From positions 62,001 to 126,000 of IMG/VR virus record IMGVR_UViG_3300017963_000192: a DNA stretch of 64,000 nt; one strand, written 5' to 3'. The notes beneath the pieces are model-generated. The model did not search any database, was not told where the DNA came from, and saw only the letters and a program-made list of their open reading frames with translations. A program made the translations under genes and the position numbers. Shown here one piece after another: positions 32,294 through 51,657 of the stretch (position 1 is the first letter of the stretch; the number at the start of each line of letters is the position of its first letter).

Positions 32294-32587
32294 CTACATT
32301 AATTTAAAAAACTTATCAAATGAACTGATTTTTAATAAATCAAACAAACCTTTATTTATATTTATCAAAGACACTTCTTTATCAAAAGATTTTTGTTTTT
32401 TTACCAATGCTACTAAAACACCTAATCCAGAAGAGTCCATACATTTAACATTTATCATATCCACAATTATATCTCTATCATTAGGAATTTCTGTTAATAA
32501 TTCTTTTTTGATTTTCACAATATTTTCTATACATAACGCATCTTCTACCACTATTATATATTTATCGTTTTCTATTTTTATTTCCAT
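32294..32587 (-). CDS. STAS anti-sigma factor antagonist (start trimmed to ATG 32587)
   Basis: IIVDMINVKCMDSSGLGVLV, SpoIIAA/RsbV-type motif. Confidence 0.88.
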   Translation of the reverse strand: MEIKIENDKYIIVVEDALCIENIVKIKKELLTEIPNDRDIIVDMINVKCMDSSGLGVLVALVKKQKSFDKEVSLININKGLFDLLKISSFDKFFKLM

Positions 32588-32795
32588 TTTTTGATTTCCT
32601 TTTTTCTTCTGTTGAAGAAAGTTCTTCTTGATAAGCAAAAGAATTTATAAGTTGTTCGTTTGTTAGCTTACCTTGTTTTATTAATATAAAACCCAACAAA
32701 CCTCCTTCGTGTCTTTGAATGTTAAGAGCTGTACTAACATCCTCCCTTGATACATATCTAAGTTTTATTAAAATTTCCCCAACTTTTTTATTCAT
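32562..32795 (-). CDS. Stand-alone MshEN-like c-di-GMP-binding protein (start trimmed to ATG 32795)
   Basis: KVGEILIKLRYVSREDVSTALNIQ...LLGFILIKQGKLTNEQL matches the tandem RLGxxL motif; AAGGA RBS. Confidence 0.75.
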   Translation of the reverse strand: MNKKVGEILIKLRYVSREDVSTALNIQRHEGGLLGFILIKQGKLTNEQLINSFAYQEELSSTEEKRKSKNGNKNRKR

Positions 32796-32805
32796 TATTT
32801 TTTCC

Positions 32806-33393
32806 TTACTTACCATTATTATCAAAATCATTCAGATAATTAATCGCATCTTCATATTCATCATACACTTTAAATAGGTTATACACGCTTAATCTTTTTG
32901 CAATTTCATATGATCTCCCTCTAAAACCATAAAAGGCGAGAGATCTATTACATTTTTTAAAATGTTCTGAAAGATGTATAAATACACCTACTCCAGATGA
33001 ATCGAATAAACTTAATTTGGAGCAATCTAGTATTGCATGTAAAGTTGTTTCGTATTTATTACAAATTATTTTATATGTTTCGAGAATGTTTTTTAAAGTA
33101 TTAGGGGTATTGTATATTGTAAGTTCTTTGAAATTTAATTTAATATTTAGAATGTTGTTTATTTTATCAAAAGAAATTGAATTGTCTAAAGAAACATCTC
33201 TTTTTTCTTTTTTATAAGGTTCACTTAATCTTTCAAGCCAATCACATGGTTTGTTAGAATTATTAATGCTATCAATCCCATCATTAGTGAAAGCATTAAA
33301 AAAATTAGGGTGTCTTTCCCAATCATATTTATGTTCGGAAACCAGGTTGTTATTCTCAAATTTATTTTCGAGTAAAGTTTTTTCATACTTCAT
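32806..33393 (-). CDS. STAS domain protein with an N-terminal extension
   Basis: AILDCSKLSLFDSSGVGVFI. Confidence 0.8.
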   Translation of the reverse strand: MKYEKTLLENKFENNNLVSEHKYDWERHPNFFNAFTNDGIDSINNSNKPCDWLERLSEPYKKEKRDVSLDNSISFDKINNILNIKLNFKELTIYNTPNTLKNILETYKIICNKYETTLHAILDCSKLSLFDSSGVGVFIHLSEHFKKCNRSLAFYGFRGRSYEIAKRLSVYNLFKVYDEYEDAINYLNDFDNNGK

Positions 33394-33397
33394 TACT

Positions 33398-33949
33398 TTA
33401 ATCTCCCGAATTTATCTCAATTATATTTAATCTTTCACAATCAAAAAAATTAAAAGGAGCCACTTCTGCTGAAACTATGTCGGGAAACAGATAAACACCT
33501 CCGTCTATATAACTATTAACAACAAGTTCTGTACAAACAACCGCTTTTTTATCGGCATCTCCAACTCTTTTTAATTTAAATAGATATTTTATTAATAATA
33601 ATAACAACTGTTTATATGAATAATGTTCTCCTTCTCTTTTTACAGCAGATTCAAGTATTTTTCTATGTATTTCATCATTCATCCCTTTGTATCGTGCTAT
33701 ATATAAAAGTACATCCTCTTTTTTGTATTCTTGTAGTTGTTTAATCACAACTCCAATGAAAGTTGCTTCTATCGTAATCCCGTTTCCTAAATATATTAAT
33801 GCATGCGAGGCTTTGTATTTTGATTTAATTTTTTTAAAAAAGGTTTCTTGGAAATATACAATAAATCTGCTTATTATGTTTTTCTTTTTGTATATTAATA
33901 ATATATCGCTATCTTTCAATAATTCTTTATATTGTAAATACTCGCTCAT
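33398..33949 (-). CDS. Permuted papain-like NlpC/P60 (YiiX/YebB-like) enzyme
   Basis: ASHALIY (His) before VVCTELV (Cys), with a YSY motif: the permuted order. Confidence 0.75.
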   Translation of the reverse strand: MSEYLQYKELLKDSDILLIYKKKNIISRFIVYFQETFFKKIKSKYKASHALIYLGNGITIEATFIGVVIKQLQEYKKEDVLLYIARYKGMNDEIHRKILESAVKREGEHYSYKQLLLLLIKYLFKLKRVGDADKKAVVCTELVVNSYIDGGVYLFPDIVSAEVAPFNFFDCERLNIIEINSGD

Positions 33950-34030
33950 TATAATTCTCCTGAATGATTTCGTACATCATTTTTAGTACGTCATAAATAC
34001 GCAGTCTTACTTTTAATCCTTTCTTAAACA

Positions 34031-34774
34031 TCATTTAAATGTTCTCACATAAAATTCTAATTCAGCATTTATATCTTTATCATGCAATACTCTTAATCTA
34101 ACTTGATTTGCATATGGATTTTCAGAATAATATTTAACATATTTAGGAGGAGCTTCAATTTCATAATGCTGATTTTGATACCATAATCGTTTGTGTTTTA
34201 CAAATGTCCAATTTCCTCCGTATGCCGGTGGAATGTTTGGAGCCATTATAACATATACTTCTATTGGAAATTCTCCTGCTGATGAACTTATAAGTTGTAT
34301 CCCACCTCCATCTAAGTAATAGCTAAAACTTGGCGTTATAGTAATTTCTGTTACTCCTGTACTTGTTCCCAAGTGTGTTGTTCCTGTTGATGTAGTAATA
34401 GTAACATTCTCTCCCGTATCTTCTCCATAATCAAGACTGTCGGTATCTCCAGTAGTGAAATATATAAAAGTCATTGCGAGAGTGCCTTCAACTGGTCTTG
34501 GTTTTGTTTTAGGAATGCCAGTCTCAGGTTCAATGGGAGCTATTGTTTGATTAGAAGTATCTTTATAGTTTGTTTCAAAATCGATTAAACCAGTAGAGGT
34601 ATCAATACTGTTAAGATGGCATTCATATCTAAGGTTTCCGTCTGTTACAAATATTTCATAGTACTTGTCAGAGTTTTCGGTTTCCTGCCTAAAATTGTAC
34701 TGTACTTTGTTCAGTATTGATTTTGTAGTACAAATAGCAATGAATTCATCATATTCCATTAATTCTTTATACAT
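34031..34774 (-). CDS. Hypothetical virion protein
   Basis: Thr-rich, D(F/Y)ExNY motif shared with neighbours, coupled stops/starts. Confidence 0.55.
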   Translation of the reverse strand: MYKELMEYDEFIAICTTKSILNKVQYNFRQETENSDKYYEIFVTDGNLRYECHLNSIDTSTGLIDFETNYKDTSNQTIAPIEPETGIPKTKPRPVEGTLAMTFIYFTTGDTDSLDYGEDTGENVTITTSTGTTHLGTSTGVTEITITPSFSYYLDGGGIQLISSSAGEFPIEVYVIMAPNIPPAYGGNWTFVKHKRLWYQNQHYEIEAPPKYVKYYSENPYANQVRLRVLHDKDINAELEFYVRTFK

Positions 34775-35424
34775 TATTTCTTCTCCACATAACTAAGAAC
34801 ATACCCTTTAGCAGTTAAATCACCAGTACCATTTCTTCTCTGTTGAAGAATTCTAATTCTACTACCTTTTTGATAATTTAAATCTAGATAAAGTGTTGAT
34901 ATGTTGTTGACATAGCTAAAATCTATATCTTTCATTGTGATACCGTCATCATCTACAATAACTTTCTTTAGGGAATTTAAAGGAGCTTGAAGAGCAACTT
35001 CATCATCAATTTTTACTCTTATTTTCTCAAGATTATCACATTTATACACAAACTCAGAGAACCATTTTTTCTCCGACCCAAAATCTATGTCATAAAATTC
35101 TGTCCAACCATCATCAGTACATTCGTGTGTAACATCTCCACTAGTAGAATCATATTCCCTTCTAAATCTATCTGATCTAAAAACATTATCTTTTATTTGG
35201 TTGTTGGCATTGGATGTATAATTAGCTTCATAGTCAATTACACTTGAAGCATGGCGCACTTCGTCTATGTAACATATATATAATAGATGTTCTCCATCTG
35301 GAGCAAACAAGGTATAATATTTAGCTCCTCCAGTAGATGTTATTATATGCTGATATTGAAGATTCTTTGTTTCAGAATCTAATACATGAGACTTATATTC
35401 AGTATATGTTAATTTAAGTTCCAT
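34774..35424 (-). CDS. Hypothetical virion protein
   Basis: N-terminus paralogous to 34031-34774 (DYEANY). Confidence 0.55.
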   Translation of the reverse strand: MELKLTYTEYKSHVLDSETKNLQYQHIITSTGGAKYYTLFAPDGEHLLYICYIDEVRHASSVIDYEANYTSNANNQIKDNVFRSDRFRREYDSTSGDVTHECTDDGWTEFYDIDFGSEKKWFSEFVYKCDNLEKIRVKIDDEVALQAPLNSLKKVIVDDDGITMKDIDFSYVNNISTLYLDLNYQKGSRIRILQQRRNGTGDLTAKGYVLSYVEKK

Positions 35425-37988
35425 CAGTAAACTTCCCTAAATGATAATGATGCGTGCATCGTTGATGATGTTCCTAACGACTTTCCTACTAAAACCAGGA
35501 TATCTCTATCTCCAGAATAATTAGACACAAGTTTTAAAAGCATTTCTGGTACTTCGCTTGCTAACTGATTTCTATCAGCACCTTGACTAGATACAAACAT
35601 ATCTTCTATTTCTTCTCCACCGCTATACGCAGATGCTGTTATATCATATTCAGCAATTGAATTTGTACCAGCAGATACCCAGGATGCTCCAGTAAGTGTC
35701 GCTCCATGAATAAGTTTAACATGAACCAATGTATTTGATTCATTGTATGTTTTAAAGGTTAATGGTAATATTTGTGCTCGTTTATACGTTTCTTTCAATC
35801 GTAAAGCGATAATAGGTACATACGTTGCTCCAACAACACGGTCAGCGGCACCTGTCGTAACACTCCTTGTAACACCTTTGGGGTTATACCCTCCCTCACT
35901 CTCAATTTCAACACATACGTTATCCATATATGTATTACTTGCTGTAGAAGATGTATTTTCTATTTCATATCGTAGTGGTAGATTAGCTGTCTGCATATAA
36001 ACTTTATCTATAATATTAGCATGTAGAAATTGGTGGATATAGTAGAATTCTCCATCTATACTAAATCCCATACGAACACGTCCCATACCTAACCACTGAA
36101 TGTCCAATATAAATATTTGACCTTTAGATACATCTACTGTAATAGCACTTTTACCAGTACCATCTAAAGTATCTATATTCCAGTCATCTTGTTGTACTTT
36201 ATTTTCTACAACAGAGCCAGTAGTATAGCTCCTTTCTACTACATACAAACCGCCAGTAGATGTTTGTTCAAAAAATACACCATTATAATCATCAAAGTAT
36301 CCAATTCTTTTTACAACACCAGCTTTTTCAGACCCCATTATTCCTGTCATGGCAATTCTGAGAGAATTATGTTCATAAAATGATGTTAAATACGTATTAC
36401 CATCAGGTACACCTATAGCAACAGTCCATTGATATCCAATAATTTCTATAGACTCAACGATATCCCATCTTAAACTATCTTGTATATTTTTAAATAAATA
36501 TTTGAATTTAGTACTTTCTTTTCTATTTTTAATTTTATTATAGACTTTTTCTACATCTTCTTCTTTTCCGTAAATTCCAATCTCTTTATAGAATAATTCT
36601 ATATCTTTTTTTGAATGTAATGATAGTATATAAGCTCTGCTACATTCTTTACCATTACATTTAGGAATTTTTGAATGTATGTTTCCATGTATTCCAAACT
36701 TTAGTAAAAGTTCCTTTATATCTTTCACGAGTTGTTCTGAAATAGAACAATACCCAATCTCATCTTTAAACGCCCATCCATCAGTAGAATACAATCGAGA
36801 AAGAAACGTAGTTATAATTTCTTTTGGAGATTCAAATATATCATTTGGAATAAATTTATATGCGGAAGATTTCCCCAATAATTCAACTTTTCGTAAAAGT
36901 TTAGTAATTCCATTTTTTCCCTTTCTACTTCCATTTTTATAAACTACATGATAAGAATTACTATCGCCTTTCTTCTTTTTCAACACACAATCATATTGTC
37001 CTACTAAAGACTCAAATTCGTCTAATTGGCTTCCTTTGTTTTGACTAAATGTTACATGATGTGCAGATATTCCACCATCTCCTATAAGATAAGCTAAAAT
37101 TTTAGCATCTGATTCTGTTAAATTATTATTAGTTCCAAAAATTGGTAATGTATCAGCTATAGCAACAAAATCTCCTATTTTAATATTTTCAAGATTAGTC
37201 CATTCCTTAATATTGAAGTGTGGTTTATTTCCTTTTTTCCAAAAAGTTTTATAATATTTTTTTCCTACCCACAGTGGATGTTGAGCATTACCACATAATT
37301 CATTTCCAGATTTAGTTTTTATTTTATATATAGGTTCATAAGCATTCCATTCTGCTATAGCATCTACTTCTATTCTTTTTCCATCTCTAACAGTTAAAAG
37401 TTTAAACTCTGTATCAACTAAATCTTTAGCTTGTATTCTTCTACCATCAGCCAATGGTATATAATCAGAAGCTAATCTGCATTTACCTGGCTGATAATTA
37501 AAATACTCTTTAGTTTGTCGGATTACTTTATCACCATTTGCAGTTGTACATTCCAATCTTGTAGAAGCCTCGTTACTTCGATAAGTAGCTGTTCCTCCAC
37601 CAGTAAGTACGTTATTCCAAAATAATGGTTGGTCATTAAAAATTTGTGTTGAATCAAATAATGAATGAGGATTGCCAGTTCTTAATCGTGAGAAAGCATC
37701 AAGGTTAAAACTATCTGAAAACGTGGTTGTAACAGATATAGCACTATCCACACCCCTAGATGCTCCATCAGCATAATTATTTATATAGTCATCATAATCA
37801 GCAGTGCCATATTTTATTATTGTATAATAAGTAAATTCGTTAGATTGCCTTACACGAACAGTAAGATCGCTAACATCACTTTTAAGAGCGTGGTCGTATC
37901 CAAATTTAGGATTTGCATCTATTATAGCTTTTAAATCTAACCATTTTGGTATTTCTATCGATTGTACTATACTTCCTGACGCTGCCAT
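35424..37988 (-). CDS. Probable virion protein (lectin-like beta fold) interrupted by an intein (about 482 aa after splicing)
   Basis: Splicing gives FNYQPGK|SLRIAMTG; DAFSRLR, QWLGMGRVRMG, NLPLRYEI motifs seen in phage virion proteins. Confidence 0.65.
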   Translation of the reverse strand: MAASGSIVQSIEIPKWLDLKAIIDANPKFGYDHALKSDVSDLTVRVRQSNEFTYYTIIKYGTADYDDYINNYADGASRGVDSAISVTTTFSDSFNLDAFSRLRTGNPHSLFDSTQIFNDQPLFWNNVLTGGGTATYRSNEASTRLECTTANGDKVIRQTKEYFNYQPGKCRLASDYIPLADGRRIQAKDLVDTEFKLLTVRDGKRIEVDAIAEWNAYEPIYKIKTKSGNELCGNAQHPLWVGKKYYKTFWKKGNKPHFNIKEWTNLENIKIGDFVAIADTLPIFGTNNNLTESDAKILAYLIGDGGISAHHVTFSQNKGSQLDEFESLVGQYDCVLKKKKGDSNSYHVVYKNGSRKGKNGITKLLRKVELLGKSSAYKFIPNDIFESPKEIITTFLSRLYSTDGWAFKDEIGYCSISEQLVKDIKELLLKFGIHGNIHSKIPKCNGKECSRAYILSLHSKKDIELFYKEIGIYGKEEDVEKVYNKIKNRKESTKFKYLFKNIQDSLRWDIVESIEIIGYQWTVAIGVPDGNTYLTSFYEHNSLRIAMTGIMGSEKAGVVKRIGYFDDYNGVFFEQTSTGGLYVVERSYTTGSVVENKVQQDDWNIDTLDGTGKSAITVDVSKGQIFILDIQWLGMGRVRMGFSIDGEFYYIHQFLHANIIDKVYMQTANLPLRYEIENTSSTASNTYMDNVCVEIESEGGYNPKGVTRSVTTGAADRVVGATYVPIIALRLKETYKRAQILPLTFKTYNESNTLVHVKLIHGATLTGASWVSAGTNSIAEYDITASAYSGGEEIEDMFVSSQGADRNQLASEVPEMLLKLVSNYSGDRDILVLVGKSLGTSSTMHASLSFREVY
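36366..37481 (-). mobile_element. Intein (372 aa) with LAGLIDADG homing endonuclease
   Basis: Starts CRLASDYIPLADG, block B NAQHPL, ILAYLIGDGG and FLSRLYSTDG, ends YEHN with Ser at +1. Confidence 0.9.
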
Positions 37989-37989
37989 A

Positions 37990-38601
37990 TTATCCCTCTG
38001 ACCTTACAACCATACCTCTTTCAAGAGTTAGGTTTGTTTGATTGGCTTGTGCTTCTATTTTAAAATAATCTGTAAATTCCATACCACCTGGAAATGTTAG
38101 AACAAGTACCTTGCCCTGACTTTCTGTATGAATAAAATCAAGGTCAGCTACTCCTGGAATACTTGTATCAAGTTCATAGTCTCTGTAAAGTTCATCTAAA
38201 TAAAAACCATCCATTATTAAATTATCATCAACAGTTACTTTTATGTTTATATTATTATTATCAAAAACACATCTTGCCCAGATGATTTTTTGTGGTCTAG
38301 TAGATGTTGATATATTATAAATAGTATCATAAGAACCATTAGTGAGATTTTGATCTTTCGTCATCTCCTCGTATCTGAGATTCTCACCTGTGAGTTTAAC
38401 TTGAACAATACCGCTTTTAATATTACAATCTAATGAGCGAACACCTTCTCCATATTCTTCTGATTCATCTTTTGTGGTTACACCAAGTCCCTCAGAACCG
38501 ACTATACGAATAGCAAGTGATCCAGAAGATGTATCTACAAGAAGAACATCTCCTGTTGATGAGTTTATTAGTATGGCTTCTACTTCTACTACTGGTGTCA
38601 T
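37990..38601 (-). CDS. Hypothetical virion protein
   Basis: 203-aa beta-rich ORF in the operon. Confidence 0.55.
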   Translation of the reverse strand: MTPVVEVEAILINSSTGDVLLVDTSSGSLAIRIVGSEGLGVTTKDESEEYGEGVRSLDCNIKSGIVQVKLTGENLRYEEMTKDQNLTNGSYDTIYNISTSTRPQKIIWARCVFDNNNINIKVTVDDNLIMDGFYLDELYRDYELDTSIPGVADLDFIHTESQGKVLVLTFPGGMEFTDYFKIEAQANQTNLTLERGMVVRSEG

Positions 38602-38605
38602 AAAT

Positions 38606-39256
38606 TTAAATTAGTATGATTGAATACACTATCAAAAATTGTCCGATAGCATATGTACTCCATACCACAACTCCCTCATATTTAATTGTTTTTATATATT
38701 TATCTATTATTATAATTAAGTCAGAAATCCAAAATAATAATGCACCTATTCCAATAAATAATCCTGTTGCTTTCATAGAACCATAATATATATCTATAGC
38801 TAAAGATGTCATAATACTAATAGTAACCATATATACTGCTATGCCTATTTTCTCTTGTAGAGTTAATAACTTTGGATATATTTTTTGATATATTAATACT
38901 AAAATTCCAAGTAAAATAATAAGTACAAATATGACTTTAAAATTCCATTGTAAAAGAAGTATGAAAGCTATTACGTAGCATATATGTGTTATTATAAAGA
39001 AAACTCCACCCTCCAATAGAGACTTAGATAGTAAGAACATATCTCCTATTAAAGAAAAAAGAAGTCCCAACATTATGCAAAACATAAAAACAGTTGGATG
39101 TGTTATCATATGTAATATAGCAATAACAAGAAGTACTCCTACAACAAAAGGAGTAATCATATTCTCAAGTATTGGAACTGGTTTTATCTTAGTAAATATT
39201 TTAATGCCAAAAGAACTAAAAAATAAAATCAATAATATTATTAATGTTGCAGTCAT
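38606..39256 (-). CDS. YhhN/TMEM86 family (lysoplasmalogenase-like) membrane protein
   Basis: Multi-TM; GLLFSLIGDMFLL, FFIITHICY, GALLFWISD, TYAIGQ family motifs. Confidence 0.82.
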   Translation of the reverse strand: MTATLIILLILFFSSFGIKIFTKIKPVPILENMITPFVVGVLLVIAILHMITHPTVFMFCIMLGLLFSLIGDMFLLSKSLLEGGVFFIITHICYVIAFILLLQWNFKVIFVLIILLGILVLIYQKIYPKLLTLQEKIGIAVYMVTISIMTSLAIDIYYGSMKATGLFIGIGALLFWISDLIIIIDKYIKTIKYEGVVVWSTYAIGQFLIVYSIILI

Positions 39257-39270
39257 TCACATTCCTTATT

Positions 39271-39567
39271 CTATAAAGCTTTTTGCCAATATTTCCATCG
39301 TTTGTCTTTAACAATTCTATCTGTATCGCATTCCCAAACTCTTTTTACAACTTTACAGTCATATCGTCTCATAGCTTCTCGTCTCTTAAAATAAGAATCT
39401 TCGCCTTTGTATTTTACAAAAGTTCCATCTTCACAAACATAACAAGCTGTATAACCTTTGTTACGTCCATTAACCTCGTCAGAAAAAACCAAAGTGTATA
39501 CAAGCATAAACAAAATACCTAGAACAAATATAAGTATCATTGTCCTAAATATATTACTTTCAAACAT
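39271..39567 (-). CDS. Hypothetical protein with an N-terminal TM/signal
   Basis: Hydrophobic N-terminus, Cys-containing tail. Confidence 0.5.
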   Translation of the reverse strand: MFESNIFRTMILIFVLGILFMLVYTLVFSDEVNGRNKGYTACYVCEDGTFVKYKGEDSYFKRREAMRRYDCKVVKRVWECDTDRIVKDKRWKYWQKAL

Positions 39568-40148: not shown

Positions 40149-40171
40149 TTTAATACCTCCTATATTATTAT

Positions 40172-42230: not shown

Positions 42231-42260
42231 CTAAAACCCTTTAAAAAAAGGGCTTGGCTT

Positions 42261-43064: not shown

Positions 43065-43190
43065 AATAAATTAATTATAAAAATATTTTCGGGGTTAGAT
43101 TTTATCTAAATAAAATCAATGATACTAATCACTGTCCCCCGTTAATATTAAAACTAAATTACATAATCTACGCCTATAATTATTATTTTA

Positions 43191-45233: not shown

Positions 45234-45367
45234 AATTTTATCTCCTATAAAAAATTTATCTAAATTTTTTAGTTCATATAGGTCATCTCATCTTATATTA
45301 ATTTAATTTGTCTGTATTAATGTATGAATTGGTTTCATATATTAACACAAATTTTTTCTTATTCAAT

Positions 45368-45401
45368 CTTAAATAATAAAAAGATTTTACTGGATTTTAA
45401 G
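45368..45401 (-). promoter_or_regulatory. Candidate late promoter CTTAAAAT-N14-TTATTATTTAAG
   Basis: Fixed-spacing copy upstream of 45233. Confidence 0.55.
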
Positions 45402-45416
45402 GCAAGTGCAGTAATA

Positions 45417-46250
45417 CTAGACTGTTTTTTCGTACTTAACTACTAAATAATCGCCTACCGTTAACTCTAAATCATTACCAAAAGTTATCAATGTTCCACT
45501 AATAGTGTAATCCCAAGAAACATCATTAACTAAATCTAATCCATTCAATTTAACAGTTTCTGAATTGTTTATTGGAGTATAGGTTAAATCAACCTGACCC
45601 GTTGAGGTTATTGCTTGTGTTACCGGAAATTTTTCAACATACCATTCAGCATCACCTGTAGAAGAGACTATTCCAGTAGCACCAATATATCTATAACCAT
45701 ATATCCACAAACCATTTATATCATAAAAAGTTGTTTTAAAATGATTTGCCTCATCTCCAGAAATGAACAATATTCCAGAAGTGTAACTATATGCCCAACA
45801 CGGAGCACCTCCAGTTCCAGCATGATAAATTGTTGATATTTCTGTTCCACCAGAATCTGGATCACCATGAAATAATTTTGCCACATAACCATTAGATGGA
45901 TCACCACCATCTCTTATTAAAGCTGGTTGAATCCAGTTTTCGTATATCGGACTAGAATTATCATTATATGTTGTTCTAGCAACATAAGCACCATAATTAC
46001 TTGTAACATCAGCAGTAAGCCTTATTTTTCTTTTTTCTAATATGGTGGGATTATTAGTTACATTTGTGTCAGCTTCAGAAGGATTTGTAGCTGGAGGTAT
46101 ATCATTAAAGCTCTGCCAAATTTTATTAAGCGGAGTAATAGGTGCCCATCCAAATAATTCGTTGAACCAGTATTTGCTGTCTGTGGTACTTTCTATTTGT
46201 TGAGTTAATTTACTAACAATTGATAGTTTTTCTGAATCAGAAAAAGCCAT
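45417..46250 (-). CDS. Virion protein sharing its C-terminal domain with 43191-45233
   Basis: VKLNGLDL..DYTISGTLITF. Confidence 0.6.
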   Translation of the reverse strand: MAFSDSEKLSIVSKLTQQIESTTDSKYWFNELFGWAPITPLNKIWQSFNDIPPATNPSEADTNVTNNPTILEKRKIRLTADVTSNYGAYVARTTYNDNSSPIYENWIQPALIRDGGDPSNGYVAKLFHGDPDSGGTEISTIYHAGTGGAPCWAYSYTSGILFISGDEANHFKTTFYDINGLWIYGYRYIGATGIVSSTGDAEWYVEKFPVTQAITSTGQVDLTYTPINNSETVKLNGLDLVNDVSWDYTISGTLITFGNDLELTVGDYLVVKYEKTV

Positions 46251-46253
46251 TGA

Positions 46254-46412
46254 TTATTTTTCCTCTAAAACTTCCTCTAGATCAATATATAGTTGTTCCA
46301 AACTCTTTTTAGAAAGAGTCTTTACTATTAGTGTTGAATCTGAAGTAGCTATACTTATAGTGAATTCGTTATCTGATTTTTTATTAACTTTTATAGGTTC
46401 ATCAAATATCAT
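46254..46412 (-). CDS. Small hypothetical protein (52 aa; not in the ORF track)
   Basis: MIFDEPIKVNKKSDNEF...EEK with an AGGA RBS; fills the gap. Confidence 0.5.
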   Translation of the reverse strand: MIFDEPIKVNKKSDNEFTISIATSDSTLIVKTLSKKSLEQLYIDLEEVLEEK

Positions 46413-46423
46413 ATTATTGTCCT

Positions 46424-46888
46424 TTATAAAGATTCTATTTCATAAGAGAAAGCCAGCCAACTGTTTTTAAGAAGTTCCTGATTACGGCTTTCTTCCCAAT
46501 ATCTAACAATGAGTGCTGGTTTACTAAATAAATAATCTCGTACAGTAAAGAAATGATCTAAATTTGCTACTAATCTTTCCATAGCTACAATGTCCTCTTC
46601 CTCTAATTCACGAGCATCTATTCCGACATAAGGTTGACCCATTTCATCCTTTGGTTTATCTAAATGATCTTCATTTAAGCCAGAACAAGAGACTAATGTA
46701 GGATAACCTTTTTCATTTAATTTATATATAATATCTAATATACCATTATCTATTTCAGCATCTAAATTTTTATTCACAACATTTTGTAGACTTTCTGGAA
46801 ATTCTTCTACATCAACATCTATAACATCTTTTCCAGTATCTGCTATCTTAATAAGATTTTTAATGTTTTTTATGTTTCTAAAATTCAT
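46424..46888 (-). CDS. Hypothetical phage protein
   Basis: LNEKGYPTLVSCSGL motif; AGGAG RBS. Confidence 0.55.
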   Translation of the reverse strand: MNFRNIKNIKNLIKIADTGKDVIDVDVEEFPESLQNVVNKNLDAEIDNGILDIIYKLNEKGYPTLVSCSGLNEDHLDKPKDEMGQPYVGIDARELEEEDIVAMERLVANLDHFFTVRDYLFSKPALIVRYWEESRNQELLKNSWLAFSYEIESL

Positions 46889-46897
46889 AAAAATCTC

Positions 46898-48556
46898 CTA
46901 ATTAAAAGTAATACTAAAACTTGTTATTCTCTCACTTCCAGTAAATCCAACTCTAATGTATACTGTATCAGAACAGTTTACAATATTGTTTGTCCCAAAA
47001 GTGCAATCAATATACCCAGAACCAGATCCCACTCTACACCCACCAGAGACAGGGTTTCCGTTATTCCAATCACTTGCGTTATAATCATCTAAACAATCTA
47101 TCCAAACAGTTCCTCCACCGCTAGTTCCATCCCAAGCTTTTGCAAGTTTCATCTCAAGTGAGTTATAACTTCCAACTATATTTATTCTAAAATTAGCACT
47201 TGCTGTACCATCGTGTTCAAACTGTCTCCATAAGAATACTTCAGTATTCATATAAGAACCAGAGTAATCTGGTTGACTTGTTAGGTTTGGGGAATATATC
47301 GTAAAATCTGTAGTATTTCTCTCACATCCACCACATCTAAAAACGGCATCCATTATCCCCACATCAACAGTAGAATCCCAGGATTTCGCACCGCCCGAAT
47401 CAAAGTTTGCTGTAGAAGGACATCTCCAATCTTCATAATCAAATCTTTCTATTAATCTGGTACTAGAATTTGTTCTTGTATTTACAAGTATGTTTGCATT
47501 GCTAGATGGAACCCATGAACCATTTGTCCAATCTATAGGTCTTGCATTTATATTTGCAGTTGTTGTTACAGAACAAAAATTGGATGCATTAATAGCCCAA
47601 TTCGTCTTATTATAAGAATCGTTTGCATCATCATATGCATAAGTCCATCCAGTTAAATCCGAGCCAGATAAATCTAATGTTGGTAATCCATATTCACTAC
47701 CTTCAATATCTACTTGATTAAGAGGATATGTATGATAATTTAAATTATCAATATCAGTAATATCAACCGTAAATTGACTTCCAGTTGTATAATACTCAAC
47801 GCCAGACAAAAATCTTGTTACAACACTTCCAGCAGTTTCTACTATAGTAACACCGGACAATGTTGCAATAGTTGGATTAGGATCATAAAAAGTAGCTGTT
47901 TGTGTTTTGGTATAATCAATGTCATTATGATGAATCATTTCTACCGTAATTCTTCCACCACTTGATATTATTAAACTTATAGATATTGTTATAGTAACAA
48001 TACCTTTATACTTGATATAATCCGTATCCCAGGAAGTTACTTGTATTCTAATGTTATCTGAAGTATCATCATAATTTCCTGTTATTGCCGGAGTTGTTTT
48101 AGTAGCTACTTTTGTAATCTCATCAGCATCATAAACATTCACCTCTAAGGTGGAAGTTAAACTATCAAAAAGACATTGATTTGTTGTTGTATAACTCCAA
48201 GTCGTTGATTGCGTTGCAGGATGAAGTGTTCCAGCCACCCAATCTCCTTTACTAAAAGGAGTTCCTTCAGATGCTGGATTTGATATATACCTATTTGTAG
48301 TTGATATACTACCCACAGAGCAATTGTTATTACCATCACTTGTATTAAAATGAGAAACGAAGTCTACTTCTGGAGCAAATATTGTAACCTCATTAGGACC
48401 TGTTTTCATTGCATTATGACCTGTCCCAACAATGTTGACGGTTGTAATGCCCGTACCTATTACAACTCCTTCATCTTCAAAAGTAATACCTGTACTAGTA
48501 GGGGTTTGTTGTCCTCTTTTTCGTTCAAGAAGAATTTTAGGTTCTCTAAATCCCAT
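46898..48556 (-). CDS. Beta-rich virion / fibre-associated protein
   Basis: 552 aa, Thr/Ser/Gly/Asn-rich; EDEG..I...TTVNIVG motif. Confidence 0.55.
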   Translation of the reverse strand: MGFREPKILLERKRGQQTPTSTGITFEDEGVVIGTGITTVNIVGTGHNAMKTGPNEVTIFAPEVDFVSHFNTSDGNNNCSVGSISTTNRYISNPASEGTPFSKGDWVAGTLHPATQSTTWSYTTTNQCLFDSLTSTLEVNVYDADEITKVATKTTPAITGNYDDTSDNIRIQVTSWDTDYIKYKGIVTITISISLIISSGGRITVEMIHHNDIDYTKTQTATFYDPNPTIATLSGVTIVETAGSVVTRFLSGVEYYTTGSQFTVDITDIDNLNYHTYPLNQVDIEGSEYGLPTLDLSGSDLTGWTYAYDDANDSYNKTNWAINASNFCSVTTTANINARPIDWTNGSWVPSSNANILVNTRTNSSTRLIERFDYEDWRCPSTANFDSGGAKSWDSTVDVGIMDAVFRCGGCERNTTDFTIYSPNLTSQPDYSGSYMNTEVFLWRQFEHDGTASANFRINIVGSYNSLEMKLAKAWDGTSGGGTVWIDCLDDYNASDWNNGNPVSGGCRVGSGSGYIDCTFGTNNIVNCSDTVYIRVGFTGSERITSFSITFN

Positions 48557-48563
48557 TATTTTC

Positions 48564-48935
48564 CTATTTTGACATTAATGCTAATTCAACAATAGAGTCT
48601 TCAATAAAGTATATGCCAATCTGTCTAACCGAATCTTGAATATATAAAACATCTCCTGCTTTGAGGGTTTTAGCTCCATCTATAGAACTTGATAAATCCA
48701 TACCCTTTTTGTTAAATGCTATTCTTACTGAACCATCTCCAATATTATCAACTAATAAATACTCAAATGATTGTGTTATTGTAGTCTCAAAATAGGTGAG
48801 ACTACCATCCATAAAATCATATTCGTAAGAAGTTGCTGTAGTGCCACTTCTTACCAAGAATATTGTTTTCTGTACTTGATGTTCACTACTTGGAGAGGGT
48901 ATACCATCTCCTATGACTATCTTTTTTCTAGGCAT
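48564..48935 (-). CDS. Hypothetical virion protein
   Basis: 123-aa ORF heading the operon. Confidence 0.5.
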   Translation of the reverse strand: MPRKKIVIGDGIPSPSSEHQVQKTIFLVRSGTTATSYEYDFMDGSLTYFETTITQSFEYLLVDNIGDGSVRIAFNKKGMDLSSSIDGAKTLKAGDVLYIQDSVRQIGIYFIEDSIVELALMSK

Positions 48936-48960
48936 AATTTATCTCTATTGAATAATTTAT

Positions 48961-48994
48961 ATTAAAATATAAATGTATTTTGAGTAATTTTAAG
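48961..48994 (-). promoter_or_regulatory. Candidate late promoter CTTAAAAT-N14-TTATATTTTAAT (perfect copy)
   Basis: Upstream of 48935. Confidence 0.6.
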
Positions 48995-49044
48995 GAAAGT
49001 TTTCTAATTAAAAGGGGAGTAATCAATACTTCTTTGTATATTAA

Positions 49045-49344
49045 TCATAAACCTTTATCGCATTTTTTACGACAAAGTTTGATACAAAGATTTTTTGTAT
49101 TGATTTCTTTTGTTTCTAGCATATTTGCATCATCAACAGATTTGACTTTATGAAGAATTTCCCAACTGAAGTTATCTTCACCATACTTAGCTATAGCTTT
49201 GTGTATGTAACTGTGATTTCTAGATGTCTTTTTTCTAGCTAAATGGTTATGTTGCACTCTCCTTTTGTTTAATGATAGTGATGTTTTGCCTATGTAACAT
49301 TTTCCATTAATTATATTTGTTGCCTTATATACTAAATAACTCAT
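49045..49344 (-). pseudogene. Truncated GIY-YIG endonuclease (catalytic domain only)
   Basis: MSYLVYKATNIINGKCYIGKT...AIAKYG...WEIL, then an early stop with no DNA-binding tail. Confidence 0.6.
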
Positions 49345-49360
49345 TAAGTTTTCCATGTAT

Positions 49361-49849
49361 CTAGAAATAATTGCTTCTACCATAATCATCTTTAAGTCTA
49401 ACTATATCGTTTTCATCATTCTCATCTCCATCTTCTACTCCTAATGCAACGTCCAATATCATTCCATATTTTTTATTCCCATTATAAATTGCTCTGTGTA
49501 CAACATGTTTTTTAAATCCAAAAATGTCTCCTTTTTTTGCTTTTATTGTAATTAAATTATTATTTAAAAATTCCTCAAGTAATTTAAATTTAGGTTCTAC
49601 ATCTGGCATATTAAGTATTTTTTTAGAAACAGGCTTTTTGCTATACTTTATTATAAAATCATTATCTAATATTAAATATAACTGATATCTTTTAAAATGA
49701 AATTGGAGAGATAATGATTGCTTCGGTTTTACATATAATACTTTTGTTGTACTTTTAACATTATCAGCATATAATCCATAGTGCCCCCACGGTCTTTCTA
49801 CTTCTAATGTTGAAAATGGTTTAATGAATTTATTTCTCTTTAATTTCAT
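49361..49849 (-). CDS. Mannose-6-phosphate isomerase type II-like cupin
   Basis: VERPWG, VKPKQSLSLQFH, DIVRLKDDYGR, as in the C-terminal domain of ManC/AlgA. Confidence 0.8.
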   Translation of the reverse strand: MKLKRNKFIKPFSTLEVERPWGHYGLYADNVKSTTKVLYVKPKQSLSLQFHFKRYQLYLILDNDFIIKYSKKPVSKKILNMPDVEPKFKLLEEFLNNNLITIKAKKGDIFGFKKHVVHRAIYNGNKKYGMILDVALGVEDGDENDENDIVRLKDDYGRSNYF

Positions 49850-49864
49850 CTTTTTCTCACCTCC

Positions 49865-50221
49865 CTAGCACATGTTATTCCATCTTCTGACTGCATCAAT
49901 TTCTTCTTCTGTCTTTGGACCACTTGCCTTACAAGTTTCGCATTTAACTTGTTTATATTTAGTATCATGATATACATATATAAGAACATGTGTTGATTTA
50001 CAATATGGACAAGGTTTTAAATTCAAGTCTATATCCCAAAACATAATATCTTCAGTATAGGGGATAAAACAGGATGTACTACCATGTCTCCCTACATATC
50101 TGTATATCCATCCACTAGGAACTCTTATAAACGTTCCTTCATAATTATTCTTTTTTTGGATGTTTACTGACTCTCCAATTTTCATTTTAAATAATCTTTT
50201 TGCTAATTTATTTTCTTTCAT
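49865..50221 (-). CDS. Protein with a C-terminal Lar-like (restriction alleviation) Zn finger
   Basis: LKPCPYC...CETCKASGP...AVRRWN. Confidence 0.65.
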   Translation of the reverse strand: MKENKLAKRLFKMKIGESVNIQKKNNYEGTFIRVPSGWIYRYVGRHGSTSCFIPYTEDIMFWDIDLNLKPCPYCKSTHVLIYVYHDTKYKQVKCETCKASGPKTEEEIDAVRRWNNMC

Positions 50222-50571
50222 ATCTCTTTTTTAAGACTTTCTAAAGCCTCCTCCAAATTATCGTGTATGTCTATTAATTTATCAAAATTAGTAATAGCCA
50301 ACACTTGTTTACATAGTTCGTTTGGGTTGAACACTTTAAAGGCTAATCCCTCCTTATCTAGTTTTCTTTTATTTATAATAAACACTTTTAATGCAGAACT
50401 ACCTATGAATTCCACATCTTCAAGATCAACCAAAATATTGGCTTTTTTATGTTTTTTCATAATTTCTTCAAGAACATTCTCAAAACTGTCCGATAAATCT
50501 AAATCCATTTTTCCAGACAATTCTACAACAATGATGTTTTCCTCTACTTCTTGATATTCTACACTACCCAT
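50218..50571 (-). CDS. STAS anti-sigma factor antagonist
   Basis: LSGKMD, ILVDLEDVEFIGSSAL. Confidence 0.88.
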   Translation of the reverse strand: MGSVEYQEVEENIIVVELSGKMDLDLSDSFENVLEEIMKKHKKANILVDLEDVEFIGSSALKVFIINKRKLDKEGLAFKVFNPNELCKQVLAITNFDKLIDIHDNLEEALESLKKEI

Positions 50572-50609
50572 TCTAACCCTCCATTATTAAATTTGGTAAG
50601 GTTTCATAT

Positions 50610-50936
50610 TTATAATTCATATAATTTTTTTAATTTCCATTGCAAATGGAACCATGACCATAAAGGGTTACGTTCTCCTGGAATGAAGTTATCTTCTCTC
50701 CAACTCATCCACATATTTCTGTACTGAAAAAATTTAAACTTAACTTCTTTAATGGTTTCCCACAACATTATCCACTCAATTCTAGGGTAACTTATAAACC
50801 ATGCTACTCCTGTATACTTTTTCAACTCCCACGTCCAAAACAAGAATCTTCCCATAGCATCTGGTAATCCACACATTATTATTTCTGCGTTCTCTGTTTT
50901 AATAAATAAACAAGCCATCCTTTCTCCTACACACAC
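50610..50936 (-). CDS. Trp-rich hypothetical protein
   Basis: 108-aa ORF in the operon. Confidence 0.45.
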   Translation of the reverse strand: MCVGERMACLFIKTENAEIIMCGLPDAMGRFLFWTWELKKYTGVAWFISYPRIEWIMLWETIKEVKFKFFQYRNMWMSWREDNFIPGERNPLWSWFHLQWKLKKLYEL

Positions 50937-50943
50937 CTATAAA

Positions 50944-51303
50944 TTAATCTAATAAATCTTTAAAATCAAGCCAATCTTTTTCTATACACAATAAAAACAA
51001 ATAACCTATCATATCAGAAGTATCATTTTTTCTCAATTCATTTGCATTTTGAATTCTTTTAAGCTTATCATCTAATCTTATACAAATAGAACTTCCAGCA
51101 TCGTGTTTTGAAAAAACATTCAAAGGATTTAATGCACTATCACCGTATCTTTTATTCTTCTCAAGAAGGAAATCTCTAAAATTGTCACAAGCTTTTATAA
51201 TTTTCCCTTGAGTCTCAGTATATAATTTAGGTTCATCATTTTTATTTTTGTAACTAACAATTAAATCCTCTTTTTTAATATCCATTCCTATAGGATTTGC
51301 CAT
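50944..51303 (-). CDS. DUF1599 / nucleotide-modification-associated-like small protein
   Basis: LLEKNKRYGDS, IRLDDKLKRI, DMIGY motifs. Confidence 0.55.
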   Translation of the reverse strand: MANPIGMDIKKEDLIVSYKNKNDEPKLYTETQGKIIKACDNFRDFLLEKNKRYGDSALNPLNVFSKHDAGSSICIRLDDKLKRIQNANELRKNDTSDMIGYLFLLCIEKDWLDFKDLLD

Positions 51304-51657
51304 TTATTTCTCCTTTGATTTAATAAATTCTACCGCCTCTTCTTCATTATTACAAACTTTTATAACCTCATCAATACCTGTAATGTTAAACACTTTTTTA
51401 CAAGTAGCATTTGCATCAAATAATACAAGTTTCAGCTTATTGCAAATCAATTCTTTATATGCAATTATAAAAACTTTTATAGCATAACTATTTAAATATC
51501 CTACATCGAATAAATCCATTAGTATGTGACAATTAGGATTATCTTCTATAGCCTCATTTACCATATCTTCAAAGTCTTTATCTAATGTTATATCAATATT
51601 TCCAGATGGTGTCAATATAATTATATCGTCTCCTATCTTTTTATATGCTGATTTCAT
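51304..51657 (-). CDS. STAS anti-sigma factor antagonist
   Basis: PSGNID, ILMDLFDVGYLNSYAI. Confidence 0.85.
   Translation of the reverse strand: MKSAYKKIGDDIIILTPSGNIDITLDKDFEDMVNEAIEDNPNCHILMDLFDVGYLNSYAIKVFIIAYKELICNKLKLVLFDANATCKKVFNITGIDEVIKVCNNEEEAVEFIKSKEK

What the first reader, a model, noticed from the sequence alone, without database searches (positions are those of the whole stretch)
32294..51657. Four STAS anti-anti-sigma proteins in two clusters, all keeping the phospho-acceptor Ser
Seen: 32294-32587 (MDSSG), 32806-33393 (FDSSG), 50218-50571 (IGSSA) and 51304-51657 (LNSYA). Each retains the Ser equivalent to SpoIIAA Ser58. No anti-sigma kinase or sigma factor is in the window. 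Inference: decoys that titrate host anti-sigma kinases to release an alternative sigma factor, possibly the one that reads the CTTAAAAT-N14 motif.
Basis: partly seen in the sequence, partly recalled or inferred. Interest (0 to 1): 0.6.

Follow-up and report, generated by a model that had tools for sequence, protein, structure and literature searches.

The report
Spirochaete jumbo phage carrying five STAS proteins
A roughly 235-kb phage of uncultured spirochaetes encodes five small STAS "anti-anti-sigma" proteins but no matching kinase or phosphatase, and two of them sit in an operon with cyclic-di-GMP signalling genes, so the phage probably interferes with its host's switch-protein and second-messenger signalling.

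Summary
All four ORFs are single-domain SpoIIAA-type STAS proteins above Pfam's cut-off. Each keeps the Ser that aligns with SpoIIAA Ser58.

- A fifth STAS lies outside the window. It is 64-73% identical to a 107-aa STAS that is strongly conserved in Spirochaetota and lies next to a HAMP-PP2C phosphatase there. This names the likely host phylum and shows capture from the host.
- STAS1 and STAS2 are not lone genes. They sit in a tight same-strand cassette: STAS2, an MshEN-type c-di-GMP-binding protein, STAS1, PAS-PAS, a coiled-coil/TM protein, a REC-like protein and an HD-GYP phosphodiesterase.
- The phage encodes its own sigma-70-family factor outside the window.

No HATPase-type kinase or PP2C was found in the 217.7-kb record or in about 15 kb beyond its ends. 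Candidate host-lineage genomes carry 10-18 STAS paralogues and several RsbW-type kinases.

Best reading: the phage STAS proteins feed into the host partner-switching network as mimics or pseudo-substrates, and cluster 1 couples this to c-di-GMP breakdown. Binding is not shown; the one co-fold test gave no verdict. The link to the CTTAAAAT motif and to a host alternative sigma has no support. I found no paper describing phage-borne STAS sets.

The parts
32806..33393 (-). STAS2: 195 aa with a roughly 75-aa N-terminal extension and a STAS domain (FDSSG). It is the most diverged copy.
   Evidence: PF01740 E 1.2e-8, 35.1 bits. TIGR00377 aligns residues 79-176 but scores below its cut-off. The N-terminal 100 aa match no Pfam family. 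No match at E<=1e-6 in 11 Spirochaetota genomes.
32562..32831 (-). 89-aa MshEN-type c-di-GMP-binding protein. It overlaps STAS2 and STAS1 by 26 nt each.
   Evidence: NCBIfam NF053729 'cyclic di-GMP-binding domain, MshE-related': E 6e-13, 48.4 bits against a cut-off of 38, model positions 2-53 of 53. The Atlas model resembles MshEN/GspE_N clusters, TM 0.63-0.79. Two 24-residue motifs with a 5-residue spacer can be read directly in the sequence. Pfam PF05157 itself did not hit.
32294..32587 (-). STAS1: 97 aa, canonical MDSSG.
   Evidence: PF01740 E 1.1e-11. Best solved relative is TM1442, E 3.2e-9. 37-40% identical to the conserved 107-aa Spirochaetota STAS. The word search found only itself.
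31440..32279 (-). PAS-PAS protein, 279 aa, with no output domain. It starts 14 nt after STAS1.
   Evidence: PAS_9 E 2.9e-18 for residues 37-140. Second PAS in residues 155-265, E 1.3e-5. TIGR00229 E 1.8e-27.
31125..31436 (-). 103-aa coiled-coil protein with a C-terminal hydrophobic helix.
   Evidence: Translation. Only weak coiled-coil-type Pfam noise.
30737..31117 (-). REC-like receiver protein, 126 aa.
   Evidence: PF00072 E 7.6e-6, 26.5 bits, below the cut-off of 30.2. D53, T73 and K95-P are present in the translation.
29957..30721 (-). HD-GYP phosphodiesterase, 254 aa. It is the last gene of the cassette, followed by a 121-nt gap.
   Evidence: PF13487 HD_5 E 1.4e-40 and PF01966 E 1.1e-20. 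Motifs AVHDIGK and HHERMDGSGYP in the translation. 53-60% identical to HD-GYP domains of Spirochaetota proteins.
51304..51657 (-). STAS4: 117 aa, LNSYA. Its start shares base 51657 with the last base of the upstream 242-aa ORF.
   Evidence: PF01740 E 9.4e-16. TIGR00377 61.9 bits, above the cut-off of 53.45. 36% identical to STAS3.
50218..50571 (-). STAS3: 117 aa, IGSSA. Its end overlaps the start of the Lar-like gene by 4 nt.
   Evidence: PF01740 E 3.8e-16. TIGR00377 72.9 bits. Best solved relative is TM1081, E 5e-10. In 1.84 billion cluster representatives, only STAS3 itself scores E<=1e-30; the next best are 34-41% identical.
51657..52385 (-). 242-aa protein of unknown function just upstream of STAS4; a possible unrecognised partner.
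   Evidence: No Pfam family. Only a weak PHROG hit. No PADLOC hit. Atlas model of low confidence with no useful match.
50610..51303 (-). Two unrelated genes between STAS4 and STAS3: a 119-aa phrog_1485 protein and a 108-aa Trp-rich protein.
   Evidence: Neither matches a profile built from the five phage STAS proteins.

Best explanation
The window belongs to a roughly 235-kb myovirus from sediment and seawater metagenomes. Its host is most likely an uncultured member of the Spirochaetota.

The phage carries five single-domain SpoIIAA/RsbV-type STAS proteins from at least three lineages:
- STAS5, and more distantly STAS1, resemble the conserved 107-aa host STAS.
- STAS3 and STAS4 are a phage-lineage duplicate pair nearest to a second host STAS type.
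- STAS2 has no close relative.

The phage has no Ser kinase and no PP2C. Any phosphorylation or partner switching must therefore use host enzymes.

Proposed mechanism (inferred): the phage STAS proteins, made during infection, occupy host RsbW-type GHKL kinases and/or compete for host PP2C phosphatases, as mimics or pseudo-substrates. This would lock one or more of the host's many partner-switch modules in the 'antagonist present' state.

STAS1 and STAS2 are co-transcribed with a c-di-GMP receptor (MshEN), a PAS-PAS sensor, a REC-like protein and an intact HD-GYP phosphodiesterase. Cluster 1 therefore probably couples this interference to lowering or sensing host c-di-GMP, that is, to control of motility, biofilm or stress state.

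Shown: domain identities, the conserved Ser, the gene order, the absence of phage kinase and phosphatase at Pfam level, host derivation of STAS5 and of the HD-GYP domain, and expanded STAS and kinase sets in candidate host genomes.

Inferred: binding to host kinases or phosphatases, the direction of the effect, and the output. The output need not be a sigma factor.
For: - STAS identity and the Ser58-equivalent residue.
- Fifth copy.
- STAS5 has more than 270 relatives at 64-73% identity. All those with a name are Spirochaetota. All 80 best genome loci are Spirochaetota.
- In those genomes the orthologue lies convergent to a (sCache-)HAMP-SpoIIE phosphatase.
- STAS5 keeps 54 of 62 host-invariant columns.
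- No HATPase_c_2, HATPase_c, SpoIIE or PP2C_2 in the record. None is recorded in about 15 kb beyond its ends.
- Candidate host genomes: 10-18 STAS matches each and 4-15 in 31 genomes. One complete chromosome has 11 HATPase_c_2 matches, six clearly above the cut-off. It also has a STAS-STAS-kinase operon whose first STAS reads YLNSSG.
- GSSA and NSYA lie within the natural variation of the subfamily.
- Cassette. Gene junctions of -26, -26, 14, 3, 7 and 15 nt follow.
- HD-GYP 53-60% identical to Spirochaetota HD-GYP domains.
- The locus is held in full by runs from two studies (sediment 2018, seawater 2021). Both are flagged as possible sources of this assembly, so this is weak support. Other assemblies also carry it.
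Against: - No interaction is shown. The single co-fold job (STAS1 with a Spirochaetota RsbW-like kinase) gave no verdict.
- STAS1-4 are at most 40% identical to any host STAS found, and STAS2 matches none at E<=1e-6. Their partners cannot be read from homology.
- The conserved Ser is a family-wide feature.
- The host is inferred from two captured genes only. No CRISPR spacer or prophage evidence was available.
- No RNA data exist.
- Several neighbours are unknowns that could be unrecognised partners: 242 aa, 108 aa, and the 174-aa gene after STAS5.
- About 2 kb of the full genome was not seen.
Confidence: 0.45

Rival explanations
1. One reading: the STAS proteins are decoys that titrate host anti-sigma kinases, releasing a host alternative sigma factor that then reads the CTTAAAAT-N14 promoters of the phage.
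For: - Same basis as the best explanation for the kinase-titration step.
- CTTAAAAT-N14-TTAnnnTTTAA is a real intergenic bipartite motif. 15 of 38 occurrences lie in the 12% non-coding DNA, and ten share the downstream box.
Against: - The phage encodes its own sigma-70-family protein. This is the simpler candidate reader of a phage-specific promoter.
- No motif copy lies directly upstream of a STAS gene.
- No SigB/F-type sigma was tied to these modules. The phage sigma scores only E 0.0054 to TIGR02980.
- Many partner-switch systems have non-sigma outputs (established knowledge: BtrUWV, SypA/SypE, HsbA; CapK/CapS in PMC13373217).
Confidence: 0.1
2. A closed phage circuit. STAS1 and STAS2 are adaptor subunits of the phage's own c-di-GMP module. 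They would bind the MshEN receptor, the PAS-PAS sensor, the REC-like protein or HD-GYP and tune phosphodiesterase activity, without touching host kinases. STAS3 and STAS4 would similarly serve unknown phage partners.
For: - Overlapping or near-abutting genes on one strand.
- STAS2 and STAS1 bracket the MshEN gene with 26-nt overlaps.
- STAS4 is translationally coupled to an unknown 242-aa protein.
- STAS1-4 are far from any host STAS, as expected after long co-evolution with phage partners.
Against: - I found no precedent for STAS regulating HD-GYP or MshEN proteins.
- STAS5 is a near-copy of a host protein that is paired with a PP2C phosphatase.
- Host homologues of the small MshEN protein are not next to STAS genes.
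- Cluster 2 has no signalling neighbours.
Confidence: 0.2
3. Anti-defence. The free STAS proteins act as pseudo-substrates or antitoxin mimics against host defence modules controlled by anti-sigma-like kinases (CapK/CapS-type regulators, VapK/VapS/VapC-type toxin-antitoxin). The HD-GYP enzyme would destroy cyclic-nucleotide defence signals.
For: - CapK phosphorylates a STAS-wHTH repressor to switch on immune operons. VapS is a STAS-domain antitoxin released by phosphorylation of its conserved Ser (PMC13373217).
- HD-GYP enzymes of jumbo phages have been predicted to counter cyclic-nucleotide defences (PMC7824862).
- A Lar-like restriction-alleviation gene overlaps the end of STAS3.
Against: - No PADLOC family matches any STAS or neighbour.
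- None of the phage STAS proteins has a wHTH.
- No CapK/VapK system was sought or shown in the candidate hosts.
- The MshEN motif points to c-di-GMP rather than to defence nucleotides.
- STAS5's host orthologue is a conserved chromosomal gene next to a sensor PP2C, not a defence-island gene.
Confidence: 0.12
4. Passenger genes. The STAS genes are captured host fragments (morons) with no role in infection.
For: Jumbo phages accumulate host-derived genes. There are no expression data.
Against: - All five are intact ORFs with phage-like GC of 22-31%.
- They sit in tight operon-like arrays.
- One pair arose by duplication and stayed intact at 36% identity.
- The invariant Ser and core residues are kept.
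- The locus is identical in several assemblies.
Confidence: 0.05

Closest known systems
SpoIIAA / RsbV anti-sigma-factor antagonists (TIGR00377; solved examples TM1442, TM1081, SpoIIAA 1auz/1th8, RsbV 6m36)
   Same: Single STAS domain of about 100-117 aa. The conserved Ser at the start of helix 2 aligns with Ser58. Best sequence matches among solved structures are TM1442, E 3e-19 with the five-protein profile, and TM1081.
   Different: These are encoded by a phage with no cognate GHKL kinase, PP2C or adjacent sigma gene. There are five copies in one viral genome. STAS1 and STAS2 score below the TIGR00377 cut-off. STAS2 has an N-terminal extension.
The conserved 107-aa STAS of Spirochaetota, paired with a (sCache-)HAMP-SpoIIE membrane phosphatase
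   Same: STAS5 (outside the window) is 64-73% identical over its full length and keeps 54 of 62 host-invariant columns. STAS1 is 37-40% identical.
   Different: The phage copy differs at eight host-invariant positions (G9M, L32M, S34T, S42Y, N51T, Q65N, H81Q, F96Y). It lies next to a stand-alone REC gene rather than a PP2C gene.
Partner-switch systems with non-sigma outputs tied to c-di-GMP or motility: Pseudomonas HptB-HsbR-HsbA with HsbD/FlgM; Vibrio SypA/SypE (from established knowledge, not tested here)
   Same: STAS proteins are genetically linked to REC domains and to c-di-GMP metabolism.
   Different: Those systems have their own kinase/phosphatase protein (HsbR, SypE) and a diguanylate cyclase. 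The phage cassette has an HD-GYP phosphodiesterase and an MshEN receptor, no GGDEF and no kinase.
CapK/CapS and VapK/VapS/VapC (PMC13373217)
   Same: A STAS protein whose conserved Ser is the target of an anti-sigma-like kinase, used outside sigma regulation. VapS has an N-terminal STAS domain followed by a C-terminal inhibitory tail.
   Different: CapS carries a wHTH and the phage proteins do not. No kinase or VapC-like partner is in the phage. No sequence comparison with CapS or VapS could be made here.
HD-GYP enzymes of jumbo phages (PMC7824862) and RpfG-type REC-HD-GYP proteins
   Same: Intact HD and HHExxDGxGYP motifs. A REC-like gene lies immediately upstream.
   Different: REC and HD-GYP are separate genes. 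They are co-arranged with two STAS genes, an MshEN receptor and a PAS-PAS protein, a context not mentioned in that survey.

Membership tests
SpoIIAA/RsbV-type anti-sigma-factor antagonist | STAS domain above Pfam PF01740 gathering score | tested here: met
   All four in-window proteins score 35.1-59.2 bits against a cut-off of 22.6. The fifth scores 78.7 bits.
SpoIIAA/RsbV-type anti-sigma-factor antagonist | TIGR00377 'anti-sigma factor antagonist' above its cut-off of 53.45 bits | tested here: inconclusive
   Met for STAS3 (72.9), STAS4 (61.9) and STAS5 (79.0). Not met for STAS1 (45.4) or STAS2 (22.4).
SpoIIAA/RsbV-type anti-sigma-factor antagonist | Phospho-acceptor Ser equivalent to SpoIIAA Ser58 | tested here: met
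   The column is invariant across the five phage proteins. It aligns to the first S of DSSG in 1auz and 1th8. Neighbouring residues lie within subfamily variation.
SpoIIAA/RsbV-type anti-sigma-factor antagonist | Cognate GHKL Ser kinase / anti-sigma (HATPase_c_2) encoded with it | tested here: not met
   PF13581 and PF02518 give no match at E<=1 in the 217.7-kb record. None is recorded in about 15 kb beyond its ends. About 2 kb was not seen.
SpoIIAA/RsbV-type anti-sigma-factor antagonist | Cognate PP2C (SpoIIE/RsbU-type) phosphatase encoded with it | tested here: not met
   PF07228 and PF13672 give no match at E<=1. The host orthologue of STAS5 does have one next to it.
SpoIIAA/RsbV-type anti-sigma-factor antagonist | Linked SigB/SigF-type sigma factor | tested here: not met
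   The genome has one sigma-70-family gene, about 80 kb or more from every STAS gene. It scores E 2.9e-10 to TIGR02937 (below cut-off) and E 0.0054 to SigBFG.
SpoIIAA/RsbV-type anti-sigma-factor antagonist | Binds an anti-sigma kinase | tested here: inconclusive
   One co-fold job gave no verdict.
SpoIIAA/RsbV-type anti-sigma-factor antagonist | Is reversibly phosphorylated on the conserved Ser | not testable with these tools
   Needs kinase assays or phosphoproteomics.
MshEN-type c-di-GMP receptor (89-aa neighbour) | Tandem 24-residue c-di-GMP-binding motifs | tested here: met
   NF053729: 48.4 bits against a cut-off of 38, full model length. Structural look-alikes are MshEN/GspE_N. Pfam PF05157 did not hit. 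Ligand binding was not tested.
HD-GYP c-di-GMP phosphodiesterase (254-aa neighbour) | HD_5 domain with HD and HHExxDGxGYP motifs | tested here: met
   PF13487 E 1.4e-40. Both motifs are read in the translation. Substrate not tested.
CapS-type STAS-wHTH repressor | C-terminal winged-helix DNA-binding domain | tested here: not met
   No HTH family hit in any of the five proteins. At 97-117 aa, four of them leave no room for one. The extension of STAS2 is N-terminal and matches nothing.
Stressosome RsbR/RsbS | RsbT-type kinase and an RsbR N-terminal sensor domain | tested here: not met
   No HATPase kinase in the genome. No sensor domain is fused to any phage STAS.

The most novel reading that the evidence does not exclude
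This would be the first described viral takeover of bacterial partner-switching. A jumbo phage floods the cell with a panel of kinase-less, phosphatase-less STAS mimics, each tuned to a different host GHKL kinase or PP2C module. One pair is wired into a phage operon that senses and destroys c-di-GMP. The virus would thus reprogramme motility, biofilm, stress or defence decisions at the protein-switch level rather than by transcription factors. A sharper variant is that some copies are pseudo-substrates for defence-controlling kinases of the CapK/VapK kind.
Probability: 0.3. Interest if true: 0.8.

Novelty: new variant of a known kind. Interest (0 to 1): 0.6.

Why it matters
Partner switching (STAS, GHKL kinase, PP2C) is one of the commonest bacterial decision circuits. 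It is hugely expanded in spirochaetes, where most outputs are unknown.

A phage that carries only the antagonist half, in five diverged copies, would be a natural set of probes for those circuits. It would also be a new class of host-takeover factor.

The co-arranged MshEN, PAS, REC and HD-GYP genes suggest that phages can combine protein-switch mimicry with second-messenger depletion.

I found no paper describing phage-encoded STAS proteins. PHROGs has no good family for them. Among 50,697 GenBank phage records, only a few unannotated records, most of them short, show weak similarity.

The finding also assigns a probable host phylum to an uncultured, roughly 235-kb phage.

Tried and rejected
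- **Co-fold test.** STAS1 with a 140-aa RsbW-like kinase from a Spirochaetota chromosome (L102) scored 0.31 against a mark of 0.34. This is no verdict, not evidence either way.
- **Searches for relatives.**
  - Word-index searches with STAS3 and STAS1 found only the proteins themselves.
  - Megablast of 24 kb against GenBank phages found nothing.
  - tblastn of STAS3 against phages found nothing.
  - IMG/VR pattern scans with STAS3, STAS1 and the STAS5 alignment found only the same phage.
  - A 40-sequence STAS alignment was too variable for a pattern scan, so I could not survey STAS across IMG/VR.
  - The first genome scan with STAS5 alone found nothing; the alignment worked.
  - Context look-ups of the two best remote relatives of STAS3 returned contigs of 0.6 and 2.2 kb, which were not informative.
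- **Reaching the missing genome ends.**
  - Three look-ups failed, probably because of start-codon choices. One call had a coordinate slip, which I corrected.
  - A 17.2-kb sister contig (L111) is not held as a record.
  - The ends were finally reached through L112 and L115.
- **Neighbour and context checks that gave nothing.**
  - The Atlas search for the 242-aa neighbour gave nothing usable.
  - PADLOC gave no defence family.
  - The sigma-70 promoter scan did not exceed shuffled sequence in this AT-rich DNA.
  - Neighbours of the best host relatives of STAS3, and of the host's small MshEN proteins, showed no signalling context.
- **Genetic code.** I considered TAG recoding because of the tRNA(CUA) and rejected it. 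TAG ends 44 of 241 long ORFs, and reading it through gains less than reading TGA through.
- **Tools left unused.** I did not run structure prediction, because domain identities were already above curated cut-offs and the unknown neighbours lack alignments.

Full report
**Setting.** The window is G000:C1:62001-126000 of a 217,703-bp virus record (IMG/VR 'linear', CheckV 88%).
- The DNA is about 31% GC, and most genes are on the minus strand.
- Tail sheath, baseplate wedge and virion proteins mark it as a myovirus.
- The same phage occurs in other assemblies, the longest 234,748 bp.
- Runs from two studies, a sediment metagenome and a seawater metagenome, hold the locus in full. Both are flagged as possible sources of this DNA.
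- No GenBank phage is close.

**Observation.** The four ORFs exist as described.
- All pass Pfam's STAS cut-off: E 1.1e-11, 1.2e-8, 3.8e-16 and 9.4e-16.
- The quoted motifs are there.
- In a joint alignment one Ser is invariant. A profile of that alignment places it on the first S of DSSG in SpoIIAA (1auz, 1th8), which is Ser58.
- Best solved relatives are the Thermotoga antagonists TM1442 and TM1081.
- STAS3 and STAS4 pass the NCBIfam anti-sigma-factor-antagonist model; STAS1 and STAS2 fall below it.
- Among the 112 nearest single-domain relatives of STAS3 the Ser is kept in 110. The residue before it is S, D, N, A or G. The residue two after it is G (82) or A (12).
- GSSA and NSYA are therefore ordinary variants, and keeping the Ser says little by itself.

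**A fifth copy and the host.** A whole-genome scan found a fifth STAS at C1:10900-11223.
- Unlike the other four, it has hundreds of close relatives: 64-73% identity, all about 107 aa, and every named one from Spirochaetota.
- The 80 best loci among species genomes are all Spirochaetota, several labelled Leptospirales.
- The host orthologues are 82% identical to each other on average. The phage copy averages 68% to them and keeps 54 of 62 host-invariant columns.
- In host contigs the gene lies convergent to a (sCache-)HAMP-SpoIIE membrane phosphatase. It is therefore a working partner-switch component there.
- The phage HD-GYP domain is also 53-60% identical to Spirochaetota HD-GYP domains.
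- I take Spirochaetota as the probable host phylum. No spacer or prophage evidence was available.

**How the five copies relate.**
- STAS3 and STAS4 are 36% identical paralogues. Both are 27-30% identical to a second host STAS type (YMSSSGLR).
- STAS1 is 38% identical to the 107-aa host type and 32% to STAS5.
- STAS2 is at most 23% identical to anything and has no match at E<=1e-6 in 11 host-lineage genomes.
- Word searches with STAS3 and STAS1 return only the proteins themselves.
- An exhaustive HMMER search of 1.84 billion cluster representatives with STAS3 finds only itself at E<=1e-30. The next best hits are 34-41% identical.
- All five genes have phage-like GC of 22-31%.

**No phage kinase or phosphatase.** HATPase_c_2, HATPase_c, SpoIIE and PP2C_2 give no match at E<=1 in the record, while the control genomes ring.
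- The record is incomplete, so I looked beyond both ends.
- The left side holds an IS21-like rve/IstB pair, a methylase and unknowns (L112).
- The right side holds COOH-NH2 ligases and small ORFs (L115).
- Neither side has a recorded kinase or PP2C family.
- About 2 kb remains unseen.
- The unknown neighbours are 242 aa, 108 aa, 119 aa (phrog_1485) and the 174-aa gene after STAS5. None shows a kinase signature.

**The host side.**
- Five genomes with the 107-aa orthologue each give 10-18 STAS matches.
- 31 relatives give 4-15 each.
- One complete 3.2-Mb chromosome has 11 HATPase_c_2 matches, six clearly above the cut-off.
- That chromosome also carries an operon of STAS (YLNSSG), STAS (IASAG) and a 140-aa kinase.

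**Cluster 1 is a signalling cassette.** Reading the minus strand from 33393 to 29957, the genes are:
1. STAS2.
2. An 89-aa protein that passes the NCBIfam model for the MshE-related c-di-GMP-binding motif (E 6e-13, 48.4 bits against a cut-off of 38). Its Atlas model resembles MshEN/GspE_N.
3. STAS1.
4. A PAS-PAS protein.
5. A 103-aa coiled-coil protein with a C-terminal hydrophobic helix.
6. A REC-like protein, slightly below Pfam's cut-off but with Asp, Thr and Lys-Pro in place.
7. An HD-GYP phosphodiesterase (PF13487, E 1.4e-40) with HD and HHERMDGSGYP motifs.

The junctions are overlaps of 26 and 26 nt and gaps of 14, 3, 7 and 15 nt, followed by a 121-nt gap. The genome has no GGDEF gene. 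Host homologues of the small MshEN protein are stand-alone genes in non-signalling contexts, so the arrangement is the phage's own.

**Cluster 2 is looser.** After a GC-rich hairpin come small ORFs, the 242-aa unknown, STAS4, a phrog_1485 protein, a Trp-rich protein, STAS3, a Lar-like zinc ribbon, a cupin and a GIY-YIG nuclease. STAS5 lies two genes downstream of a stand-alone REC whose best NCBIfam match is the receiver part of the PhyR family.

**Interpretation.** The phage has five antagonist-type proteins and none of the enzymes that act on them. One copy is a near-replica of a conserved host component. The likely hosts have very large partner-switch repertoires.
- The most economical reading is that the phage proteins engage host kinases and/or phosphatases as mimics or pseudo-substrates.
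- For STAS1 and STAS2 the operon context adds a c-di-GMP dimension: a receptor, a sensor and a degrading enzyme.
- Which host module is hit, and whether the output is a sigma factor, is open.
- My one complex prediction gave no verdict.

**The CTTAAAAT idea.** The octamer alone is not over-represented in the window: 16 found against 12.3 expected.
- Genome-wide, however, 15 of 38 copies lie in the 12% non-coding DNA.
- Ten of these, upstream of minus-strand genes, share a second box, giving CTTAAAAT-N14-TTAnnnTTTAA.
- It is a plausible phage promoter, but none lies directly before a STAS gene.
- The phage has its own sigma-70-family gene at C1:195043-195825.
- Nothing ties the STAS proteins to this motif.

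**Literature.**
- I found no paper on phage-encoded STAS proteins.
- The huge-phage and jumbo-phage surveys mention AsiA-type anti-sigma factors and HD-GYP enzymes, but not STAS.
- CapK/CapS and VapK/VapS/VapC show that STAS-kinase pairs also control anti-phage systems. This makes an anti-defence role a live alternative, though PADLOC gives no hit.

**Verdict.** The proteins belong to a known family in a new setting, so I rate this a new variant of a known kind, with interest 0.6.

Noticed in passing
window 61400-61473 (-): A tRNA with a CUA anticodon (an amber suppressor; ARAGORN labels it Pyl). Standard-code ORFs are well packed. TAG ends 44 of 241 long ORFs, and reading TAG through gains less than reading TGA through, so I see no sign of recoding.
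   Followed up: partly
window 8902-8909, 23173-23180, 45394-45401, 48987-48994, 61366-61373 (-), plus five sites beyond the window: A bipartite promoter-like motif, CTTAAAAT-N14-TTAnnnTTTAA, upstream of minus-strand genes. 15 of 38 genome-wide CTTAAAAT copies lie in the 12% non-coding DNA. The likely reader is the phage's own sigma-70-family protein at G000:C1:195043-195825, outside the window.
   Followed up: partly
G000:C1:10900-11223 and 11558-11965 (outside the window; L001): The fifth STAS, with a stand-alone response-regulator receiver two genes upstream (PF00072 E 5.7e-18). The receiver's best NCBIfam match is the receiver part of PhyR-family anti-anti-sigma regulators (E 1e-29).
   Followed up: yes
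window 52726-53898 (-) and 52694-52717: A 390-aa protein with an ARPP-1 domain (PF20208, E 2e-24), followed by a 10-bp GC-rich hairpin that probably ends its transcript just before the STAS4 unit.
   Followed up: no
window 49865-50221, 49361-49849, 49045-49389 (-): A Lar-like restriction-alleviation zinc ribbon (overlapping the end of STAS3 by 4 nt), a cupin (MannoseP_isomer C-terminal match) and a GIY-YIG/SegE-like nuclease.
   Followed up: no
window 53947-54222 (-): A phage-encoded Cpn10/GroES co-chaperonin.
   Followed up: no
window 1626-3707 (-): A 693-aa protein with radical-SAM and anaerobic ribonucleotide-reductase-like PHROG matches, consistent with an anaerobic host.
   Followed up: no
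window 33398-33949 (-): A 183-aa protein 4 nt upstream of STAS2 (phrog_1128 E 2.7e-13; weak NlpC/P60 match). It may be the first gene of the cassette.
   Followed up: no
L112 (the end of the 234,748-bp contig beyond the record's left end): An IS21-like rve + IstB pair, a HindVP-type restriction enzyme, four methyltransferase genes and a Vsr nuclease. The insertion sequence probably explains why the record breaks there.
   Followed up: partly
L102 (Spirochaetota chromosome G005:C1:414355-417705): A host-lineage operon of STAS (YLNSSG), STAS (IASAG) and a 140-aa HATPase_c_2 kinase. It shows that a non-Asp residue before the Ser is normal in these bacteria.
   Followed up: partly
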